46,706 nucleotides of DNA from Leucoraja erinacea. Its lineage: Eukaryota. Position numbers and translations under genes: made by a program. The stretch lies in assembly GCF_028641065.1 (NCBI RefSeq), contig NW_026576165.1, positions 124,001 to 170,706 on the forward strand, given 5' to 3'. The notes below the pieces were generated by a model. It saw nothing but the letters and a program-made list of their open reading frames with translations, was not told the DNA's origin and did not search any database. Shown piece by piece: positions 5,228 to 46,706 of the stretch. How positions within the stretch are numbered: the stretch's first letter is position 1; each line of letters opens with the position of its first letter.

Positions 5228-6270
5228 CATAGAAACATAGAAATTAGGTGCAGGAGTAGAGGCCATTTGGCCCTTCGAGCCTGCACCATTCGCCATTCAA
5301 TATGATCATGGCTGATCATCCAACTCAGTATCCCGTACCTGCCTTCTCTCCATACCCCCTGATCCCCTTAGCCACATCTAACTCCCTCTTAAATATAGCC
5401 AATGAACTGTGCCTCGACTACCCTCTGCGGCAGAGAGTTCCAGAGATTCACCTCTCTCTGTGTGAAAAAAGTTCTTCTCATCTCGGTTTTAAAGGATTTC
5501 CCCCTTATCCTTAAGCTGTGACCCCTTGTCCTGGACTTCCCCAACATCGGGAGCAATCTTCCTGCATCTAGCCTGTCCAACCCCTTAAGAATTTTGTAAG
5601 TTTCTATAAGATCCCCTCTCAATCTCCTAAATTCTAGAGAGTATAAACCAAGTCTATCCAGTCTTTCTTCATAAGACAGTCCTGACATCCCAGGAATCAG
5701 TCTGGTGAACCTTCTCTACACTCCCTCTATGGCAAGAATGACCTTCCTCAGATTTGGAGACCAAAACTGAACGCAATACTCCAGGTGTGGTCTCACCAAG
5801 ACCCTGTACAACTGCAGTAGAACCCCCCTGCTCCTATACTCAAATCCTTTTGCTATGAATGCAAGTCAAGTCAAGTTTATTTGTCACATACACATACGAG
5901 ATGTGCAGTGAAATGAAAGTGGCAATGCTCGCGGACTTTTGTGCAAAAGACAAACAACAAAACAACCAAACAAATTATAGACACAATCATAACACACATA
6001 TTCTTTTACATAATAAATAGTGGAAGGAAAAACGTTCTGTAGAGTTAGTCCCTGGTGAGATAGGCGTTTACAGTCCGAATTGCCTCTGGGAAGAAACTCC
6101 TTCTCAACCTCTCCGTTCTCACCGCATGGCAACGGAGGCGTTTGCCTGAATGCTAACATACCATTGGCTTTCTTCACTGCCTGCTGCACCTGCATGCCTA
6201 CTTTCAATGACTGGTGTACCATGACACCCAGGTCTCGCTGCATCTCCCCTTTTCCTAGTCGGCCACCTAG
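5228..6270 (-). mobile_element. CR1 fragment interrupted by a 284-bp LINE 3' end (5863-6146) with a TGAATGC target-site duplication
   Basis: CR1 ORF on both sides; insert has AATAAA and a (CTTGA)n tail on the - strand; duplication at 5856-5862 and 6147-6153. Confidence 0.88.
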
Positions 6271-17124: not shown

Positions 17125-17850
17125 ATTCGGCCCCTCGAGCCAGCACCGCCATTCAATATGATCATAGCTGATCATCCAACTCAGTATCCCGTACCTGCCT
17201 TCTCTCCATACCCTCTGATCCCCTTAGCCACAAGGGCCACATCTAACTCCCTCTTAAATATAGCAAATGAACTGGCCTCGACTACCCTCTGTGGCAGAGA
17301 GTTCCAGAGACTCACCACTCTCTGTGTGAAAAAAGTTCTTCTCATCTCGGTTTTAAAGGATTTCCCCCTTATCCTTAAGCTGTGACCCCTTGTCCTGGAC
17401 TTCCCCAACATCGGGAGCAATCTTCCTGCATCTAGCCTGTCCAACCCCCTAAGAATTTTGTAAGTTTCTATAAGATCCCCTCTCAATCTCCTAAATTCTA
17501 GAGAGTGTAAACCAAGTCTATCCAGTCTTTCTTCATAAGACAGTCCTGACATCCCAGGAATCAGTCTGGTGAACCTTCTCTGCACTCCCTCTATGGCAAT
17601 AATGTCCTTCCTCAGATTTGGAGACCAAAACTGTACGCAATACTCCAGGTGTGGTCTCACCAAGACCCTGTACAACTGCAGTAGAACCTCCCTGCTCCTA
17701 TACTCAAATCCTTTTGCTATGAAAGCTAACATACTATTCGCATTCTTCACTGCCTGCTGCACCTGCATGCCTACTTTCAATGACTGGTGTACCATGACAC
17801 CCAGGTCTCGCTGCATCTCCCCTATTCCTAGTCGGCCACCATTTAGATTC
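17125..17850 (-). mobile_element. CR1 LINE 3' fragment with an open ORF2 end
   Basis: 211-aa ORF at 17181-17816. Confidence 0.93.
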
Positions 17851-18809: not shown

Positions 18810-19462
18810 AAGTCACATTTATTTCTATAGCACATTTAAAAAACAACTCTCGTTGGCCAAAGTGCTTTACATTTGTTATAAGAATAGCACAACAAAACAA
18901 ACTACATACATATATACATGTAGCCCTCACTCAGAGGACGTCGGGAAAGGCTTGGGAGTATAGATACGTCTTTAGTCTTGACTTAAAAGAGTCGATAGAG
19001 GGGGCTGTTCGTTCTGATGGGAAGGGGGATGCTGTTCCACAGTCTAGGGGCTGCAACCGCAAAGGCGCGGTCGATCGCCCCTGAGCTTATGCCTAGACCG
19101 CGGGATATTCAGCAACCCCAAGTCGGCCGATCTGAGGGGCCTGGAGGTGGAGTGGTGGGTGAGAAGACTTTTTATGTAGGTGGGGGCCCATTGAGGGCTT
19201 TGTAGACATGGAGGAGAATCTTGATGTTTATACGGAACCGCACAGGGAGCCAGTGGAGAGTTCTGCCAGGATCGGGGTGATGTGATGTGGTCCCTTTTTC
19301 GGGTGCCCGTCAGGAGTCTCGCTGCCCTGCGGCGTTTTGGACCAGTTGCAGGCGGGACAGGGAAGATTGGCTGATGCCAGTGTAGAGGGAGTTGCAGTAA
19401 TCGAGGCGGGAGGAGATAAATGTGTGGATGATCTTTTCCAGGTCATCAAACTGGAGGAATTG
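18810..19462 (-). mobile_element. L2 LINE 3' fragment
   Basis: Degraded SRLDYCN...LQLVQNAA...HITPILAELHWLPV region and L2-type tail. Confidence 0.82.
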
Positions 19463-19467
19463 TTTTT

Positions 19468-20332
19468 TAAGAAGGAACTGCAGATGCTGGAGAATCGAAG
19501 GTACACAAAAAAGCTGGAGAAACTCAGCGGGTGCAGCAGCATCTATGGAGCGAAGGAAATAGGCAACGTTTCGGGCCGAAACCCTTCTTCAGACTGATCG
19601 GGGGCGGGGGTGGGCGGGGACAAGGAAGGAAAAAGGAGGAGGAGCCCGAAGGCTGGGGGATGGGAGGAGACAGCAGGGGGACTGAGGAAGGGGAGGAGAC
19701 AGCAAGGACTAACAAAATTGGGTGAATTCGATGTTCATGCCCCCAGGATGCAGGCAGCCCAGGCGGAATATGAGGTGCTGTTCCTCCAATTTCCGGTGCT
19801 GCTCGCTGTGGCCATGGAGGAGACCCAGGACAGAGAGGTCGGAGACGGAGTGGGAAGGGGAGTTGAAGTGCTGAGCCACCGGGAGGTCAGGTTGGTTATT
19901 GCGGACCGAGCGGAGGTGTTCGGCGAAACGATCGCCCAACCTCCGCTTGGTTTCACCGATATAGATCTGCTGACATCTAGAGCAGCGGACGCAATAGATG
20001 AGGTTGGAAGATATGCAGGTAAACCTCTGTCGCACCTGGAACGATTGCTTGGGTCCTTGAACGGAGTCGAGGGGGGAGGTAAAGGGACAAGTGTTGCATC
20101 TCTTGCGGTTGCAAGGGAAAGTGCCCGGGGAGGGGGTGGACCGAGAGGGAAGGGAAGAATTGACAAGGGAGTTATGGAGGGAGCCGTCTTTGCGGAAGGC
20201 AGATATGGGGGGAGATGGGAAGATGTGGCGAGTGGTGGGGTCACGTTGGAGGTGGCGAAACTGACGGAGGATTACTTTTTGTATATAACGGCTGGTGGGG
20301 TGAAAGGTGAGGACTAGGGGGACTCGGCCCTA
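19468..20332 (-). mobile_element. Penelope-like element, GIY-YIG endonuclease region and 3' terminus
   Basis: NLIYCVRCSRCQQIYIGETKRRLGDRFAEH...PVAQHFN...GMN. Confidence 0.9.
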
Positions 20333-20804: not shown

Positions 20805-21953
20805 TTGAATAAGATTAAAGCACACGGCATTGGGGGTTCAGTATTGATGTGGATAGAGAACTGGCTGGCAAACAGGAAGCAAAGAGTAGGAGTAAACGGG
20901 TCCTTTTCACAATGGCAGGCAGTGACTAGTGGGGTACCGCAAGGCTCAGTACTGGGACCCCAGCTATTTACAATATATATTAATGATCTGGACGAGGGAA
21001 TTGAATGCAACATTTCCAAGTTTGCGGATGACACGAAGCTGGGGGGCAGTGTTAGCTGTGAGGAGGATGCTAGGAGACTGCAAGGTGACTTGGATAGGCT
21101 GGGTGAGTGGGCAAATGTTTGGCAGATGCAGTATAATGTGGATAAATGTGAGGTTATCCATTTTGGTGGCAAAAACAGGAAAGCAGACTATTATCTAAAT
21201 GGTGGCCGACTAGGAAAAGGGGAGATGCAGCGAGACCTGGGTGTCATGGTACACCAGTCATTGAAAGTAGGCATGCAGGTGCAGCAGGCAGTGAAGAAAG
21301 CGAATGGTATGTTAGCTTTCATAGCAAAAAGATTTGAGTATAGGAGCAGGGAGGTTCTACTGCAGTTGTACAGGGTCTTGGTGAGACCACACCTGGAGTA
21401 TTGCGTACAGTTTTGGTCTCCAAATCTGAGGACGAACATTATTGCCATAAAGGGAGTGCAGCGACGGTTCACCAGACTGATTCCTGGGATGTCAGGACTG
21501 TCTTATGAAAAAAGACTGGATAGACTTGGTTTATACTCTCTAGAATTTAGGAGATTGAGAGGGGATCGTATAGAAACTTACAAAATTCTTAAGGGGTTGG
21601 ACAGGCTAGATGCAGGAAGATTGCTCCCGATGTTGGGGAAGTCCAGGACAAGGGGTCACAGCTTAAGGATCAGGGGGAAATCCTTTAAAATCGAGATGAG
21701 AAGAAACGTTTTCACACAGAGAGTGGTGAATCTCTGGAACTCTCTGCCACTGAGGGTAGTCGAGGCCACAGTTCATTGGCTATATTTAAGAGGGAGTTAG
21801 ATGTGGCCCTTGTGGCTAAAGGGATCAGGGGGTATGGAGAGAAGGCAGGTACGGGATACTGAGTTGGATGATCAGCCATGATCATATTGAATGGCGGTGC
21901 AGGCTCGAAGGGCCAAATGGCATCTACTCCTGCACCTAATTTCTATGTTTCTA
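20805..21953 (+). mobile_element. CR1 LINE, longest copy, partial reverse transcriptase domain
   Basis: GVPQGSVLGPQLFTIYINDL and SKFADDTKL motifs in a 331-aa ORF. Confidence 0.95.
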
Positions 21954-26609: not shown

Positions 26610-28985
26610 AGGGAGTAGAGGAAGGAGGGGAGAAGGGGAGACGAGAGCAGGAATGAGAGGGGAGGAGAGGAGAGTAGAGAGGAGTGGAGGAGAGGAGAGA
26701 CGAGGAGAGGGGAGGCGGAGGAGGAGAGAGGAGAGCAGGAATGAGAGGGGAGGAGAGGAGAGTAGAGAGGAGTGGGAGGGAGGAGGAGGGGAGGAGGAGA
26801 GAGGAGGAGAGGGAGAGGCGGAGGAGGAGGAGAGGAGGGAGAGCAGGAAGGAGAGGGGAGAGAGAGAGGAGAGAGGAGAGAGGAGTGGAGGGGAGGGGGG
26901 AGGAGAGGAGAGAGAGGAGGTGGAGGAGGAGGAGAGGAGAGAGAGGAGGAATGAGAGGGGGGAGAGAGAGGAGAGGAGAGTAGAGAGGAGTGGAGGAGAG
27001 GAGAGGGGAGGAGAGAAGAGGAAAGGGGAGGCGGAGGAGGAGAGAGGAGAGCAGGAATGAGAGGGGAGGAGAAGAGAGTAGAGAGGAGAGGAGGAGAGGA
27101 GAGGAGGAGAGGAGGGAGAGGAGAGGAGGGAGAGGGGGCGGAGAGAGAGNNNNNNNNNNNNNNNNNNNNNNNNNNNNNNNNNNNNNNNNNNNNNNNNNNN
27201 NNNNNNNNNNNNNNNNNNNNNNNNNNNNNNNNNNNNNNNNNNNNNNNNNNNNNNNNNNNNNNNNNNNNNNNNNNNNNNNNNNNNNNNNNNNNNNNNNNNN
27301 NNNNNNNNNNNNNNNNNNNNNNNNNNNNNNNNNNNNNNNNNNNNNNNNNNNNNNNNNNNNNNNNNNNAGGGGGAGGAGAGGAGAGAGAGGAGAGAGAGGA
27401 GAGAGAGGGAGGGGAGAGGAGGGGAGAGAGTGAGGGGNNNNNNNNNNNNNNNNNNNNNNNNNNNNNNNNNNNNNNNNNNNNNNNNNNNNNNNNNNNNNNN
27501 NNNNNNNNNNNNNNNNNNNNNNNNNNNNNNNNNNNNNNNNNNNNNNNNNNNNNNNNNNNNNNNNNNNNNNNNNNNNNNNNNNNGAGAGGAGANNNNNNNN
27601 NNNNNNNNNNNNNNNNNNNNNNNNNNNNNNNNNNNNNNNNNNNNNNNNNNNNNNNNNNNNNNNNNNNNNNNNNNNNNNNNNNNNNNNNNNNNNNNNNNNN
27701 NNNNNNNNNNNNNNNNNNNNNNNNNNNNNNNNNNNNNNNNNNNNNNAGAGGAGAGGAGAGAGAAGAGAGAGGAGAGATGGGAGAGAGGAGAGAGAGGAGA
27801 GAGGGGAGGAGAGGAGAGAGTGAGAGGGAGTGTGAGAGAGGGGGAAGAGAGATATAGAGAAACAATGACGGGGAGNNNNNNNNNNNNNNNNNNNNNNNNN
27901 NNNNNNNNNNNNNNNNNNNNNNNNNNNNNNNNNNNNNNNNNNNNNNNNNNNNNNNNNNNNNNNNNNNNNNNNNNNNNNNNNNNNNNNNNNNNNNNNNNNN
28001 NNNNNNNNNNNNNNNNNNNNNNNNNNNNNNNNNNNNNNNGGGGAGGGGAGGGAGAGAGGGAGGAGGAGAAGGGGACGGGAGGAATGAGAGGGGAGGAGAG
28101 GAGAGAGGAGAGAGAGGAGAGAGAGGAGAGAGGGAGGAGAGGAGAGGAGAGGAGGAGAGGGAGAGGGAGGGGGGGAGGAGAGAGAGTGGGGAGAAGGGGG
28201 GGAGAGGGAGGGGGGGGGAGAGGGAGAGAGGAGTGTGAGAGAGGGGGAAGAGAGATAGAGAGAAACAATGGCGGAGAGGGAGGGANNNNNNNNNNNNNNN
28301 NNNNNNNNNNNNNNNNNNNNNNNNNNNNNNNNNNNNNNNNNNNNNNNNNNNNNNNNNNNNNNNNNNNNNNNNNNNNNNNNNNNNNNNNNNNNNNNNNNNN
28401 NNNNNNNNNNNNNAAAACGTCACCCATTTCTTCTCTCGAGAGTGTCAAAAATTCATAGTTGACTTATTTTATCTCTAGAGGAGGAGAGGAGGAAGAGAGG
28501 AGAGAGAGAGAGGGGAGGAGAGGAGTAGAGGAGAGGGGAGGAGAAGAGAGAGAGGAGGGAGGGGGGGAGGAGGAGGGAGAGAGGAGAGCAGGAATGAGAG
28601 GGGAGGAGGAGAGANNNNNNNNNNNNNNNNNNNNNNNNNNNNNNNNNNNNNNNNNNNNNNNNNNNNNNNNNNNNNNNNNNNNNNNNNNNNNNNNNNNNNN
28701 NNNNNNNNNNNNNNNNNNNNNNNNNNNNNNNNNNNNNNNNNNNNNNNNNNNNNNNNNNNNTAGAGGAGAGAAGGGAGGAGGGAGAGGAGAGGAGGGGGAG
28801 AGGATGGTAGAGGGGAGGGGGAGAGGAGGATGGAGAGAGGAGAGGGGAGAGAGAGAGTGAGAGGAGAGAGGGGAGAGGGGAGGGGAGAGAGAGGAGAGAG
28901 AGAGAGGGGAGGGGAGGAGGAGGGGAGGCGAGGAGGGGAGAGGGAGGGAGGTGGGAAGAGAGGAGTGAGAGGGAGAGGAGAGGGG
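26610..28985. repeat. GA-rich polypurine tract with six N gaps
   Basis: GAGAG/GGAGA units; N runs between 27150 and 28760. Confidence 0.95.
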
Positions 28986-38555: not shown

Positions 38556-38644
38556 TTAAACTTCTGACACATTTACAGAGACGGGGCTCGGCAAAGATGT
38601 GACGTCTTCACAAAGTTGGGTGTCTTCACGCACTGCACTGACAC
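38556..38644 (-). CDS. MHC terminal coding exon (GVSAVREDTQLCEDVTSLPSPVSVNVSEV*)
   Basis: Strong acceptor ctcttccttacttcccag|; open in phase 1 to a TAA stop. Confidence 0.58.
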
Positions 38645-40559: not shown

Positions 40560-40631
40560 CTGAAGGCATATCTGGAAGGGTCATGAGTTGGCTCTGGATC
40601 GGCCCAAGTTGCGAGTCTCGGCTCTGGTTCA
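40560..40631 (-). CDS. MHC cytoplasmic exon 1 (VNQSRDSQLGPIQSQLMTLPDMPS)
   Basis: atctttctccag| acceptor and CAG|gtaaac donor; 72 bp, open in phase 1; unique island between repeats. Confidence 0.62.
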
Positions 40632-40732
40632 CTGGAGAAAGATAATCGCATGTTTCCACTTTGATGGAAGGAACAAGAAGGCAAGTTATTATCTGAATGG
40701 TGTCGGGTTAGGAAAAGGGGAAGTACAAGGAG

Positions 40733-41870: not shown

Positions 41871-41975
41871 CTTTCCATCTAATGACTCCTCCAGATAGAG
41901 CAATCAGAATACCGACTAATCCAGCCATTATTCCAACCACATATCCATAGACTGGTCCGTTTTGATTCTGGTGAA
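41871..41975 (-). CDS. MHC connecting peptide and transmembrane exon (VHQNQNGPVYGYVVGIMAGLVGILIALSGGVIRWK)
   Basis: tttttctccag| acceptor and G|gtagga donor; 105 bp, phase 1 to 1; Gly-rich hydrophobic span followed by RWK. Confidence 0.9.
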
Positions 41976-42316: not shown

Positions 42317-42601
42317 CCCAAACTGCAGTCAGGTTGTCAGGCACGCTCGTGTGTGTGATTTGGCAGGAATAGGTGTCGCCGATTCCACTGGGGTCAACAC
42401 TAAGCTGTAGTCTCATCTGGAACGTCCCGTCAAAGTTGGGCAGAACGTTGCTCCTTAGCACCTCTTGGTCGATGTCTTTGCCGTTCCGCAGCCAGGTGGT
42501 GTTGATGTCCATCGGGTAAAACCCATCCACTCTGCAGGTCAGGACCAAGGGATGTCCCTGTGCATTTGGACGCCTTGAGGTGATCGTGATCGCAGGTTTC
42601 G
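42317..42601 (-). CDS. MHC membrane-proximal Ig C1-set exon (alpha3/beta2 type)
   Basis: ccacttcag| acceptor and G|gtaagg donor; 285 bp, phase 1 to 1; LTCRVDGFYP, WLRNG, LPNFDGTFQ and YSCQITH motifs. Confidence 0.95.
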
Positions 42602-42659: not shown

Positions 42660-44522
42660 AGTCAAGACAAGACAAGACAAGTCACATTTATTTCTATAGA
42701 ACATTTAAAAAACAACTCTCGTTGGCCAAAGTGCTTTGCATTTGTTATAAGAATAGCACAACAAAACAAACTACATACATAGGTTACACAGAAAAGCTGG
42801 AGAAACTCAGCGGGTGCAGCAGCATCTATGGAGCGAAGGAAATAGGCAACGTTTCGGGCCGAAACCCTTCTTCAGACTGATCGGGGGTGGGGGTAGGTGG
42901 GGACAAGAAAGGGAAAAGGAGGAGTAGCCAGAAGGCTGGAGGGTGGGAGGAGACAGCAGGGGAGCTGAGGAAGGGGAGGAGACAGCAAGGACTAACAAAA
43001 TTGGGAGAATTCGATGTTCATGCCCCCGGGGTGCAGACTCCCCAAACGGAATATGAGGTGCTGTTCCTCCAATTTCCGGTGCTGCTCGCTGTGGCCATGG
43101 AGGAGACCCAGGACAGAGAGGTCGGAGGCGGAGTGGGAGGGGGAGTTGAAGTGCTGAGCCACCGGGAGGTCAGCTTGGTTATTGCGGACCGAGCGGAGGT
43201 GTTCGGCGAAACGATCGCCCAACCTCCGCTTGGTCTCACCGATATAGATCTGCTGACATCTAGAGCAGCGGACGCAATAGATGAGGTTGGAAGAGATGCA
43301 GGTAAACCTCTGTCGCACCTGGAACGATTGCTTGGGTCCTTGAACGGAGTCGAGGGGGGAGGTAAAGGGACAAGTGTTGCATCTCTTGCGGTTGCAAGGG
43401 AAAGTGCCCGGGGAGGGGGTGGACCGAGAGGGGAAGGGAAGAATTGACAAGGGAGTTATGGAGGGAGCGGTCTTTGCGGAAGGCAGATATGGGGGGAGAT
43501 GGGAAGATGTGGCGAGTAGTGGGGTCACGTTGGAGGTGGCGAAACTGACGGAGGATTATTTTTTGTATGTGACGGCTGGTGGGGTGAAAGGTGAGGACTA
43601 GGGGGACTCGGCCCTTGTTGTGAGTGCGGGGATGGGGAGAGAGAGCAGTGTTGCGGGGTATGGAGGAGACCCTGGTGCAAGCCTCATTTATGGTGGAGGA
43701 GGGGAACCCCCGTTCCCTGAATAGTGAGGACATTTCAGATGTCCTGGTGTGGAACGCCTCATCCGTGGAGCAGATGCGGCGTAGACGGAGGAATTGGGAG
43801 TAGGGGATGGAGTCCTTACAGGAAGCAGGGTGGGAAGAAGTGTAGTCCAGATAGCCATGGGAGTCAGTGGGTTTATAGTGTATGTCGGTTAGAAGTCTAT
43901 CACCTGCAATGGAGATAGTGAGGTCAAGGAATGGTAGGGAAGTGTCGGAAATGGTCCAGGTGTATTTCAGTGCCGGATGGAAATTAGTGGTGAAGTGGAT
44001 GAAGTCAGTCAGTTGTGTAAGGGGAGTCTGCACCCCCGGGGCATGAACATCGAATTCTCCCAATTTTGTTAGTCCTTGCTGTCTCCTCCCCTTCCTCAGC
44101 TCCCCTGCTGTCTCCTCCCACCCTCCAGCCTTCTGGCTACTCCTCCGTTTCCCTTTCTTGTCCCCACCTACCCCCACCCCCGATCAGTCTGAAGAAGGGT
44201 TTCGGCCCGAAACGTTGCCTATTTCCTTCGCTCCATAGATGCTGCTGCACCCGCTGAGTTTCTCCAGCTTTTCTGTGTAACCTTCGATTCTCCAGCATCT
44301 GCAGTTTCCTCTTAAACAAACTACATACATATATACATGTAGCCCTCAGTCAGAGGACATCAGGAAAGGCTTGGGAGTATGGATAAGTCTTTAGTCTTGA
44401 CTTAAAAGAGTCGATAGAGGGGGCTGTTCGTTCTGATGGGAAAGGGGGATGCTGTTCCACAGTCTAGGGGCTGCAACCGCAAAGGCGCAGTCGATCGCCC
44501 CTGAGCTTGTGCCTAGACCGCG
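42660..44522 (-). mobile_element. L2 3' end split by the Penelope insertion (42660-42781 and 44314-44522)
   Basis: The two pieces join into the sequence seen at 18810-19100. Confidence 0.82.
42782..44313 (-). mobile_element. Penelope-like element (RT C-terminus and GIY-YIG) with an inverted terminal copy, inserted in an L2 tail
   Basis: LPFLDLTI...HYKPTD and IY..C..C..IYIGET motifs; 42782-43045 is inverted at 44020-44282; aaacaaactacatacata duplicated at 42764 and 44314. Confidence 0.92.
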
Positions 44523-44548
44523 TGATGTGAAGCCGTGCAAAACCTTAC

Positions 44549-44869
44549 CCGTCTCAGCTCGGATGGCTCCTTTAACTATGTGCGAGATCATTGGCCAGCG
44601 GCGCATGTACCGAACATAGTTTCTGATAACTCTCTCATTTTTCTTCAGCTCCACTGGCTCCCTGTGCGTTTCCGTATAAACTTCAAAATACTCCTCCATG
44701 TCTACAAAGCCCTGAATGGCATATGGCTCCGCCAGCCGGTGTTTGGCTACAAACGTGTTCGAGGAGTATTCAAAGCTGATGAACTCTTTGCCGTCGAATG
44801 CAAATCGCAGGACCGCCAGGGAGGAATCTTCACCAGCGCAAGAAATGCTCACTTGACCCACGTGCATCC
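44549..44869 (-). CDS. MHC groove-domain exon (class I alpha2 / W-category beta1 type) with an internal L2-derived insert
   Basis: ctcaccag| acceptor and G|gtaagg donor; 321 bp, phase 1 to 1; MHVGQVSISC...FAFDGKEFISF matches the H93/Q96/C101 and A117-x-D119-G120-x-D/E122 pattern. Confidence 0.85.
44649..44719 (+). mobile_element. L2 LINE ORF2 C-terminal fragment inside the MHC exon
   Basis: The + strand reads LHWLPVRFRINFKILLHVYKALNG; reverse complement is near-identical to L2 copies at about 19188-19260 and 45990-46040. Confidence 0.9.
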
Positions 44870-44912
44870 CTGGTGAGCGGAAAATAATCGATGTTACGCA
44901 CCGCTGGGGTGA

Positions 44913-46258
44913 AAGTCAAGTCAAGTCAAGTCACATTTATTTCTATAGCACATTTAAAAAACAACTCTCGTTGGCCAAAGTGCTTTACATTTGTTATAAG
45001 AATAGCACAACAAAACAGACTACATACATATATACATGTAGCCCTCACTCAGAGGATGTCAGGAAAGGCTTGGGATTATAGATAAGTCTTTAGTCTTGAC
45101 TTAAAAGAGTAGATGGATGGGGTTGTTCATTCTGATGGGAAACATAGAAACATAGAAATTAGGTGCAGGAGTAGGCCATTCGGCCCTTCGAGCCTGCACC
45201 GCCATTCAATATGATCATGGCTGATCATCCAACTCAGTATCCCGTACCTGCCTTCTCTCCATACCCTCTGATCCCCTTAGCCACAAGGGCCACATCTAAC
45301 TCCCTCTTAAATATAGCCAATGAACTGGCCTCAACTACCCTCTGTGGCAGAGATTTCCAGAGATTCACCACTCTCTGTGTGAAAAAAGTTCTTCTCATCT
45401 CGGTTTTAAAGGATTTCCCCCTTATCCTTAAGCTGTGACCCCTTGTCCTGGACTTCCCCAACATCGGGAACAATCTTCCTGCATCTAGCCTGTCAAACCC
45501 CTTAAGAATTTTGTAAGTTTCTATAAGATCCCCTCTCAATCTCCTAAATTCTAGAGAGTATAAACCAAGTCTATCCAGTCTTTTTTCATAAGACAGTCCT
45601 GACATCCCAGGAATCAGTCTGGTGAACCTTCTCTGCACTCCCTCTATGGCAATAATGTCCTTCCTCAGATTTGGAGACCAAAACTGTACGCAATACTCCA
45701 GGTGTGGTCTCACCAAGACCCTGTACAACTGCAGTAGAACCTCCCTGCTCCTATCTCGCTGCATCTCCCCCTTTCCCAATCGGCCACCATTTAGATAATA
45801 GTCTGCTTTCCCGGGAAGGGGGATGCTGTTCCACAGTCTAGGGGCTGCAACCGCAAAGGCGCGGTCGATCGCCCCTGAGCTTATGCCTAGATCGTGGGAT
45901 ATTCAGCAACCCCAAGTCGGCCGATCTGAGGGGCCTGGAGGTGGAGTGGTGGGTGAGAAGACTTTTTATGTAGGTGGGGGCAGGGCAAGCCCATTGAGGG
46001 CTTTGTAGACATGGAGGAGTATTTTGAAGTTCATACGGAAGTCTCGCTGCCCTGCGGCATTTTGGACCAGTTGCAGGCGGGACAGGGAAGATTGGCTGAT
46101 GCCAGTGTAGAGGGAGTTGCAGTAATCGAGGCGGGAGGAGATAAATGTGTGGATGATCTTTTCCAGGTCATCAAACTGGAGGAATTGGTTTATTTTAGCT
46201 ATCGTCCGAAGCTGGAAGAAGCTAGCTTTTACCACGGCATTGACTCGTTTGTCAAATT
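44913..46258 (-). mobile_element. L2 LINE fragment interrupted by CR1 (about 45141-45812)
   Basis: KIIHTFISSRLDYCNSLYTG...SRLQLVQNAA ORF; (CTTGA)n tail at 44913; CR1 ORF at 45234-45779. Confidence 0.88.
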
Positions 46259-46706
46259 GTCGAAAGGCACCCATTCACCACATGCCCTCTTCCCCCCTTA
46301 CCTGCTGCCAAATTCATCCCCCACCCATGCCCTCTTCACCCCCCCCCCCAAACCTCCTCCTCTGCAAATCAGGTCAAGGTCACACTTATATATTGGCCTT
46401 ACAAGACAAGATGTGCTGCAGGGAAAGAAAATTGGCAATGGCTCGGCGGGGTTGTGGCAAAACGAAACAGCAGACACACACAACAGCCCCCCCCCAACAG
46501 AACTAACCGTCCCCGCGGAACGTTTTTTAGCGATATTTTTAGCAGAAATTGTTACGCAGAGAATAGATAATTCGCTCCCCCCCGAGCCCCGTATTTATAG
46601 AAGGATCCCCACTCCCATTCCCTATCGGTTTGATAACAGGATGAAGCAGGTGTAACAGGAGACCCACAGAGTGAGAAAAAAGGTAACAAAAAGTGATGGA
46701 GAAATC

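What the first reader, a model, noticed from the sequence alone, without database searches (positions are those of the whole stretch)
44649..44719. Antisense L2 fragment embedded in the MHC groove exon without breaking the frame
Seen: about 71 bp in mid-exon match L2 ORF2 (LHWLPVRFRINFKILLHVYKALNG on +) and are read on the gene strand as IQGFVDMEEYFEVYTETHREPVE. The exon is 107 codons against about 90 expected and stays phase 1 to 1. There is no tail or obvious target duplication, and the patch is inverted relative to the L2 copies flanking the exon. Inference: a templated insertion or template switch from a neighbouring L2 added about 23 acidic/aromatic residues at the start of the groove helix. 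This would be either transposon-driven remodelling of an antigen-presenting domain or early pseudogenisation.
Basis: partly seen in the sequence, partly recalled or inferred. Interest (0 to 1): 0.82.

Follow-up and report, generated by a model that had tools for sequence, protein, structure and literature searches.

The report
L2-derived insert in skate MHC exon
One version of a little skate immune gene from the ancient "W-category" MHC family carries 63 bases copied backwards from a common L2 jumping gene, adding 21 amino acids inside its groove helix; this version is spliced into mRNA, while a second little skate version and all 10 relatives examined (8 species) lack the insert.

Summary
Window 44649-44719 matches L2 copies in the window, inverted (93% over 71 nt, E 2e-25). 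It lies inside the beta1 (groove) exon 44549-44869 of an intact minus-strand gene. That gene is the little skate W-category "WB_DS1-like" gene of Okamura et al. 2021.

The true insert is 63 nt (44652-44714, 21 codons). L2 homology runs 3 nt and 5 nt further into bases that the insert-free form also has, so both junctions show microhomology. There is no tail and no target duplication.

Ten homologues from eight other elasmobranch species lack the insert. So do the published little skate cDNA and one contig in a skate DNA run that also holds the filled form. It is therefore allele- or paralogue-specific within the species.

It is not an assembly error. Independent DNA contigs and spliced RNA contigs from two further samples bridge both junctions with no differences.

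AlphaFold places the site inside the first helical segment of the groove helix and models the insert as a low-confidence loop.

The best mechanism is a microhomology-primed templated insertion. The donor may be the L2 1.3 kb upstream, which shares two rare variants. Whether the insert is functional or degenerative stays open. This is a well-documented case of a known kind of event.

The parts
44652..44714 (-). The inserted 63 nt (21 codons, QGFVDMEEYFEVYTETHREPV after the shared Ile). Read on the gene strand it is antisense L2.
   Evidence: One X2 DNA contig skips exactly 44652-44714. The gap has the same size and place in all homologues and in the published little skate cDNA. Removing it in a script restores ...AEPYAIELKK....
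44649..44719 (+). Full extent of L2 homology (L2 sense on the plus strand; positions 223-293 of the 601-nt L2 copy at 18880-19480).
   Evidence: blastn gives 93% over 71 nt, E 2.4e-25. Loose ends of L2 reads diverge from the exon just before 44649.
44649..44651 (.). Junction microhomology CTC (plus strand; GAG codon on the gene strand), shared by L2, the filled form and the empty form.
   Evidence: Joint position; L2 sequence.
44715..44719 (.). Junction microhomology AATGG (plus strand; ..CC ATT on the gene strand), shared by L2, the filled form and the empty form.
   Evidence: Joint position. The published empty cDNA reads AEPYAIELNK. L2 sequence.
44549..44869 (-). Beta1 (membrane-distal, groove) exon of the W-category WB_DS1-like gene; 321 nt, phase 1 to 1.
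   Evidence: Canonical splice sites. RNA contigs of X1 and X5 end exactly at 44549 and 44870 and run on into unlike sequence. Pfam MHC_I E 0.01. 100% match to NCBI XP_055486149-51.
42317..42601 (-). Beta2 exon (Ig C1-set).
   Evidence: tblastn, Pfam C1-set E 4e-17, canonical splice sites.
41871..41975 (-). Connecting peptide and transmembrane exon.
40560..40658 (-). Optional cytoplasmic exon with two alternative acceptors (40658 and 40631); absent from isoform X3.
38556..38644 (-). Last coding exon with the stop codon.
44314..44526 (-). 5'-truncated L2 3' part on the gene strand (L2 positions 375-586). It starts 22 nt after the exon's donor site.
   Evidence: blastn 95.8% over 213 nt.
45813..46191 (-). 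Upstream L2 on the gene strand and candidate donor. It has a 77-nt internal deletion (L2 positions 167-243) at 46040. Its 45991-46040 is 96% identical to the patch, inverted.
44905..45141 (-). 3' end and short-repeat tail of the same upstream L2, separated from its body by a roughly 670-nt CR1-like insert. The blastn match covers 44998-45141; the tail down to about 44905 was read by eye. That end lies about 36 nt before the exon's acceptor.

Best explanation
A 63-nt piece of an L2 LINE (an internal part of the ORF2 tail, in antisense) was copied into the beta1 exon of one little skate form of the W-category MHC gene WB_DS1-like. This happened after the Leucoraja and Amblyraja lineages split.

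Inferred mechanism: a broken or stalled 3' end in the exon, ending ...CCATT on the gene strand, annealed to AATGG in single-stranded L2 sequence. It was extended for 63 nt and rejoined the exon through the 3-nt match GAG. This would be a microhomology-primed templated insertion, by polymerase-theta-type end joining or a replicative template switch. It was not L2's own target-primed reverse transcription. The L2 1.3 kb upstream on the same strand is a candidate template.

The event survived because the length is a multiple of three and it landed in the only stop-free antisense frame.

Shown: the insert is kept in spliced mRNA and adds 21 acidic/aromatic residues. Modelled: the site lies inside the first helical segment of the groove helix, and the insert probably loops out.

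Whether the filled form still pairs with a WA chain and works is unknown. An insert-free form persists in the species.
For: L2 origin: 93% over 71 nt at E 2e-25, and a high-copy family.

Derived state: the insert is absent from 10 homologues of 8 species. It is absent from the published little skate WB_DS1-like cDNA (PMC8713811 SI). It is absent from one contig of DNA run X2, which skips 44652-44714. That contig's differences translate to the published residues: 44604 gives M>I and 44617/18 give Y>V.

Not an artefact: X2 DNA contigs, X1 RNA contigs and an X5 RNA contig cover the junctions with 0 differences. The RNA contigs end exactly at the splice sites.

Not target-primed reverse transcription: it is an internal fragment with no tail and no duplication.

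Microhomology: 3 + 5 nt. The chance of 8 or more extra matching bases is about 1e-4.

Local donor: A at 44687 is held by at most about 1.6% of L2 depth in X2, and A at 44690 by about 9%. Both are shared with the upstream L2.

Frame: only 1 of 3 antisense frames is open.

Structure: in the Amblyraja model the helix is residues 69-110 at pLDDT 74-82, with the site at D76. In the filled form residues 52-89 fall below pLDDT 50.

The gene is intact.
Against: The upstream L2 now lacks the first 21 nt of the patch and differs at 2 of the 50 shared positions. The donor is therefore unproven.

Sixty-three nt is long for the polymerase-theta templated inserts I know of. That is my own knowledge; PMC4490562 describes templated inserts but I did not take sizes from it.

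The exact empty-site DNA is known only from one 131-nt Logan contig and a machine-read protein sequence.

The empty form could in principle be a secondary deletion.

The structural models are low-confidence monomers built from 11-12 sequences.

The leader exon is not in the window, and the NCBI models of this gene start at the internal Met.
Confidence: 0.7

Rival explanations
1. A fragment of L2 cDNA or RNA from anywhere in the genome was captured at a double-strand break. This would be endonuclease-independent, end-joining-mediated filler DNA rather than copying from the neighbouring DNA.
For: L2 transcripts of both orientations are abundant in poly(A) RNA: X14 shows depth of about 10-34 per direction over the patch, with L2-type loose ends. 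The fragment is internal, with no tail and no duplication. The neighbouring L2 lacks 21 nt of the patch.
Against: The two minority variants shared with the L2 1.3 kb away are unexpected for a random donor. The microhomology fits either model.
Confidence: 0.2
2. The insert-free little skate form arose secondarily, by an exact 63-nt deletion from a filled ancestor. The Ile codon at the junction would be an L2 footprint.
For: Both little skate forms have Ile (ATT, part of the L2 match) where both Amblyraja genes have Asp.
Against: The junction position varies among relatives (D/E/R/N/K), so Ile needs no special explanation. The deletion would have no flanking repeat ('both = 0'). All outgroups are empty.
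Confidence: 0.05
3. Ordinary L2 retrotransposition into the exon, possibly twin-primed together with the downstream L2, followed by trimming.
For: A 5'-truncated L2 lies 22 nt beyond the exon. It covers L2 positions 375-586, which lie 3' of the patch's 223-293. That order is the one twin priming would give.
Against: 125 nt of conserved host sequence (103 nt of exon plus the 22 nt after the donor site) lie between the two pieces, and this stretch is not duplicated anywhere in the window. The patch has no 3' end, tail or duplication.
Confidence: 0.03
4. Assembly or polishing artefact, or a chance resemblance of an old exon sequence to L2.
For: None found.
Against: Contigs from three samples and studies, DNA and spliced RNA, carry the insert with 0 differences. 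NCBI models include it. The match has E 2e-25. Homologues lack it.
Confidence: 0.01

Closest known systems
W-category MHC beta chain, subgroup WB_DS1 (Okamura et al. 2021, PNAS, PMC8713811); 'little skate WB_DS1-like'
   Same: Same species and same gene family. The architecture is class II beta-type: one distal domain, one C1-set Ig domain, then connecting peptide, transmembrane and cytoplasmic regions. The start of beta2 is identical in the paper's dataset. Beta1 is about 92% identical. The distal domain resembles class I alpha2 as much as class II beta1.
   Different: The published cDNA-derived beta1 has no insert and differs at 7 residues (Q/R, E/K, R/S, P/R, N/K, V/Y, I/M). The window holds a second form, either an allele or a recent paralogue, with 21 extra residues.
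Templated insertions at repaired breaks (polymerase-theta-mediated end joining, e.g. van Schendel et al. 2015, PMC4490562) and replicative template switching (FoSTeS/MMBIR)
   Same: Copied DNA without a target duplication, short junction homology, and a possible template close by in cis and in inverted orientation.
   Different: The 63-nt insert is longer than the templated inserts I know of (own knowledge, not checked in a paper). No bases were lost at the site. The template is a transposon, and the product is an in-frame, expressed coding change. The enzyme cannot be identified from sequence.
Transposon-derived coding sequence by exonisation (Alu, MIR or L2 fragments recruited as new exons)
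   Same: Antisense transposon sequence ends up translated in a host protein.
   Different: No new splice sites are used. The fragment sits inside a pre-existing, conserved exon.
Endonuclease-independent LINE insertion at DNA breaks
   Same: A truncated LINE fragment without tail or duplication, joined by microhomology.
   Different: That route uses LINE RNA and reverse transcriptase. Here a DNA template next door is at least as likely, and the piece is much shorter.

Membership tests
W-category MHC beta chain (WB_DS1-like) | Class II beta-type layout: signal peptide, one membrane-distal domain, one C1-set Ig domain, then connecting peptide, transmembrane and cytoplasmic regions. | tested here: met
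   Exons for the distal domain, C1-set domain (Pfam E 4e-17), transmembrane and cytoplasmic regions are present with canonical splice sites. Foldseek matches the Amblyraja orthologue model to class II beta chains over both domains, E 5e-14. The signal-peptide exon is not in the window, but an X1 RNA contig runs 35 nt past the acceptor and the orthologues have a leader.
W-category MHC beta chain (WB_DS1-like) | Distal domain with class I alpha2-like sequence features. | tested here: met
   Pfam MHC_I matches alpha2 positions 91-151 (E 0.0016 for P0002; E 0.01 for the exon). The family profile hits MR1 and class I alpha2-alpha3 about as well as class II beta chains. The paper's specific interdomain residues were not checked one by one.
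W-category MHC beta chain (WB_DS1-like) | Match to the sequence the authors named little skate WB_DS1-like. | tested here: met
   SI FASTA and Dataset rows: the beta2 start is identical, and beta1 is identical at 78 of 85 aligned residues outside the insert. The SI text is machine-read, so single letters are uncertain.
L2 LINE (element family of the patch) | High-copy interspersed element whose ORF2 tail carries LDYCNSLY...LQLVQNAA...LHWLPV..RI.FKIL and ends in a 3' UTR with a short-repeat tail. | tested here: inconclusive
   The motifs and the tail are present in the window's copies, and the copy number is very high. Calling this 'L2' rests on my knowledge of the motif. No repeat library was available, Pfam has no model for it, and no copy in the window reaches the reverse transcriptase.
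Canonical LINE insertion by target-primed reverse transcription | The insert includes the element's 3' end and tail and is flanked by a target-site duplication. | tested here: not met
   The patch is L2 positions 223-293 of 601. There is no tail and no duplication, and the joint has no shared letters.
Microhomology-mediated templated insertion | Short homology between the acceptor site and the template at both junctions. | tested here: met
   CTC (3 nt) and AATGG (5 nt) are present in L2, in the filled form and in the empty form.
Microhomology-mediated templated insertion | An identifiable template near the break. | tested here: inconclusive
   The upstream L2, 1.3 kb away, matches 48 of 50 nt and shares two rare variants. 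It lacks 21 nt of the patch.
Transposon exonisation | Transposon-borne splice sites create a new exon. | tested here: not met
   The exon borders are the same as in homologues, and the insert is internal.

The most novel reading that the evidence does not exclude
The L2-derived 21-residue acidic/aromatic loop is a working, selectively maintained variant of the W-category groove helix. It would change which ligand or receptor the WA/WB dimer binds, and it would be kept alongside the insert-free form as a functional polymorphism or a new paralogue. That would be a natural case of a transposon fragment remodelling an MHC-type binding surface in one step.
Probability: 0.12. Interest if true: 0.75.

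Novelty: new member of a known kind. Interest (0 to 1): 0.45.

Why it matters
W-category molecules are an ancient third branch of the MHC family, and their ligands and function are unknown. Little skate carries two natural forms of one such gene that differ by a 21-residue insert inside the groove helix. The filled form is seen in spliced RNA here, and the empty form is in a published transcriptome.

This gives a ready-made pair for testing how much of the helix is needed for pairing, surface expression and binding.

It is also a clean, datable example of a non-canonical route by which LINE sequence enters a coding exon: copied by repair, not retrotransposed. The empty site, the filled site and a candidate donor are all available in one species.

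It does not change any general picture. Transposon-derived coding segments and templated insertions are both well known.

Tried and rejected
I could not fetch genomic DNA of the Amblyraja orthologues, of the second little skate scaffold (P0017) or of the Logan transcripts. All cross-species comparison is therefore at protein level.
- The large HMMER search with the exon alone gave one hit (Mobula, E 1e-4, strands only). The helix half has no detectable relatives outside the family.
- RNA raw-read run X14 gave only about 2 reads on the unique exon parts and says nothing about the insert.
- I considered and dropped the idea that substitutions cluster round the insert as a single error-prone event. 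Logan contigs remove simple SNP bubbles, so identical flanks in X2 are not evidence. The published empty form also differs further upstream.
- Twin priming with the downstream L2 was rejected, because conserved, unduplicated exon sequence lies between the two pieces.
- The protein-atlas search on the L2 ORF fragment gave only weak unnamed hits. Pfam has no model. Paper searches did not give a repeat classification for this element.
- Look-ups of the scan's earlier findings by sequence and by words were blank.
Exons were searched by reference, and full-length proteins came from the databases. In one search a script removed the 63 nt from the exon only to check the reading frame.

Full report
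**What is at the coordinates**

The plus strand of 44649-44719 reads LHWLPVRFRINFKILLHVYKALNG. The minus strand reads IQGFVDMEEYFEVYTETHREPVE inside a 174-codon open stretch.

A six-frame motif scan found the same LHWLPV...KALNG tail on the minus strand near 19255. blastn of 44500-44900 against the window gave two inverted matches:
- 44649-44719 against 19258-19188: 93% over 71 nt, E 2.4e-25.
- 44670-44719 against 46040-45991: 96% over 50 nt, E 2.7e-18.

Mapped on the 601-nt copy at 18880-19480, the pieces lie as follows:
- The patch is element positions 223-293, on the plus strand.
- The intron just downstream of the exon holds positions 375-586 on the minus strand (44526-44314).
- Upstream lie positions 15-166 and 244-462 (46191-45813), and 458-601 (45141-44998), all on the minus strand.
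- The upstream copy has a 77-nt internal deletion and is interrupted by a roughly 670-nt CR1-like element.

I call the element L2 from the well-known ORF2-tail motif. No repeat library was available to test that name, and Pfam has no model for it.

**The host gene**

The exon is 44549-44869: 321 nt, phase 1 at both ends, bordered by AG and GTAAGG. Downstream on the same strand are four more exons, all with canonical splice sites:
- a C1-set Ig exon (42317-42601);
- a connecting-peptide and transmembrane exon (41871-41975);
- an optional cytoplasmic exon (40560-40631 or 40658);
- the last exon (38556-38644).

The exon matches three NCBI Leucoraja erinacea models, XP_055486149 to XP_055486151 ("class II B-L beta chain-like"). 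They sit on a 170,706-bp scaffold, and all three include the patch.

I checked this in Okamura et al. 2021 (PMC8713811). [quoted passage not shown] The beta2 start is identical to the window, and beta1 agrees at 78 of 85 residues.

Other results fit that family's mixed class I and class II character:
- The Amblyraja orthologue passes Pfam MHC_II_beta (25.2 bits against a 20.9 cut-off) and also touches MHC_I alpha2.
- Its AlphaFold model matches class II beta chains over both domains.
- A family profile hits MR1 and class I alpha2-alpha3 about as well as class II beta.

**The insert is derived and specific to one little skate form**

In alignments, both Amblyraja radiata paralogues have one gap of exactly 21 residues here. 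So do Rhinoraja, two Pristis genes, Pristiophorus, two Mobula genes, Hypanus and Heptranchias. The residue at the junction varies among them (D/E/R/N/K).

The published little skate cDNA-derived sequence reads ...FVAKHPLAEPYAIELNKNER...RNVVRYIRRW..., with no insert and Ile at the junction.

**What the public runs show**

I laid four public runs on 44440-44960.

- **X2, a DNA run.** It carries the filled form with 0 differences. One contig crosses the exon-intron border, which marks the run as DNA. Other contigs cross each junction, with 30 letters on the L2 side.
- **A second form in X2.** One 131-nt contig (depth 23, against about 59 for the filled contigs) skips exactly 44652-44714. Its differences at 44604 and 44617/18 translate to Met>Ile and Tyr>Val, the residues of the published empty form. 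The contig overlaps imply a further difference at 44737. That is the middle base of codon 44, matching the published Arg>Pro.
- **Conclusion from X2.** A filled and an empty form coexist in one animal. The depth ratio does not look like a simple heterozygote.
- **A second scaffold.** The reference assembly also has a partial WB gene on a separate 31.9-kb scaffold (P0017). It carries the published form's SCHITH.

Whether the two forms are alleles or paralogues therefore stays open.

**It is not an artefact, and it is in mRNA**

Contigs of X1 (organism label A) cover 44549-44713 and 44684-44870 with 0 differences. Their depth is zero in both introns. They continue for 379 and 35 further letters that do not lie on the introns.

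A contig of X5 (label C) covers 44549-44698 with 41 letters running on past the donor side.

These are spliced transcripts. Together they bridge both insert junctions with more than 31 letters on each side. They also show that a 5' exon exists outside the window.

The raw-read RNA run X14 had only about 2 reads on the unique exon parts. Organism names are coded, so I cannot say whether labels A, B and C are one species. The sequences are identical.

**How it got there**

The inserted 63 nt are flanked by 3 nt (CTC) and 5 nt (AATGG) that are present in L2 and also in the empty form. The chance of 8 or more extra matching bases is about 1e-4.

The piece is internal to L2, and there is no tail and no target duplication. 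This excludes ordinary target-primed insertion.

Twin priming with the downstream L2 is unlikely. Between the two pieces lie 125 nt of conserved host sequence (103 nt of exon plus the 22 nt after the donor site), and this stretch is not duplicated in the window.

The signature fits a microhomology-primed templated insertion, either polymerase-theta-type end joining (PMC4490562) or a replicative template switch. It fits capture of L2 cDNA at a break somewhat less well.

For a local donor: the patch has A at 44687 and A at 44690. In the DNA run about 98% and 91% of L2 depth carry other bases at those positions. The upstream L2 shares both A's.

Against a local donor: that copy now lacks the first 21 nt of the patch and differs at two other positions. 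T at 44669 is nearly unique to the patch.

Only one of the three antisense frames of the patch is free of stops. An in-frame, stop-free outcome has a prior of roughly 0.12, so survival needs no special explanation.

**What it does to the protein**

In the Amblyraja model, four strands are followed by helices 69-80, 82-93 and 95-110 at pLDDT 74-82. The site, D76, lies inside the first segment.

In the profile alignment the site falls at MR1's HTIKQ|AWEAN, the first alpha2 helical segment.

In the filled little skate model, residues 52-89 fall below pLDDT 50 and are modelled mostly as a loop. The MHC_II_beta Pfam match is lost.

Both models are shallow-alignment monomers, so this only says that no confident structure is predicted for the insert.

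Polarised against the other skates, the filled form carries 8 derived residue changes and the empty form 2. This is suggestive of faster change but not significant.

The choice between "tolerated or functional loop" and "first step of decay" cannot be made from sequence.

**Limits**

- The empty site rests on one Logan contig plus a machine-read published protein sequence.
Exons were searched by reference, and full-length proteins came from databases.
- The masked N runs (27150-28760) were left alone.

**Verdict**

The main inference, a non-canonical L2-templated in-frame insertion, is supported. The neighbouring donor is plausible but unproven.

New information: the gene is the published W-category WB_DS1-like gene, the insert is form-specific within the species, and it is expressed.

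This is a good, testable instance of known phenomena and not a new kind of system.

Noticed in passing
window 42781-44283: The intron between the beta1 and Ig exons holds an element bounded by 263-nt inverted repeats that are 99% complementary (42781-43043 and 44021-44283). Its ORFs on the minus strand include a GIY-YIG-like motif (IYIGETKRRLGDRFAEH). It looks like a young Penelope-like retroelement.
   Followed up: no
window 45142-45812: A CR1-like LINE 3' part ([22 protein letters not shown]...) is inserted inside the upstream L2. Near-identical copies (95-98%) recur across the window, for example at 5411-5862, 17273-17848 and 21193-21768.
   Followed up: no
window 46040 (upstream L2): The upstream L2 has a 77-nt internal deletion (L2 positions 167-243) whose ends share TCC. 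The deleted part overlaps the first 21 nt of the segment that was copied into the exon.
   Followed up: partly
P0017 (L. erinacea, 31.9-kb scaffold); P0002/P0003 and P0007 (Amblyraja radiata): The reference little skate assembly holds a second, partial WB_DS1-like gene on a small scaffold. It has the published form's residues (SCHITH). Amblyraja has two full paralogues on different scaffolds. The family is multi-copy in skates.
   Followed up: partly
window 40560-40658: The optional cytoplasmic exon uses two alternative acceptors (40658 and 40631) or is skipped. This gives NCBI isoforms X1, X2 and X3. Amblyraja has matching isoforms with and without this exon.
   Followed up: partly
window 44440-44530 and 44908-44960 (L2 3' parts): In a poly(A) RNA run, L2 sequence is read at similar depth in both directions (about 26-150 and 16-150 per bin). 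L2 sequence is therefore present in transcripts of both orientations.
   Followed up: no
window 27150-28760: Six runs of N sit among short tandem-repeat-like sequence.
   Followed up: no
window 44871-46706: No leader exon for the WB gene was found upstream of the beta1 exon within the window. The NCBI models start at the internal Met of MHVGQ. An X1 RNA contig shows that a spliced 5' exon exists, so the annotated models are probably 5'-incomplete.
   Followed up: partly
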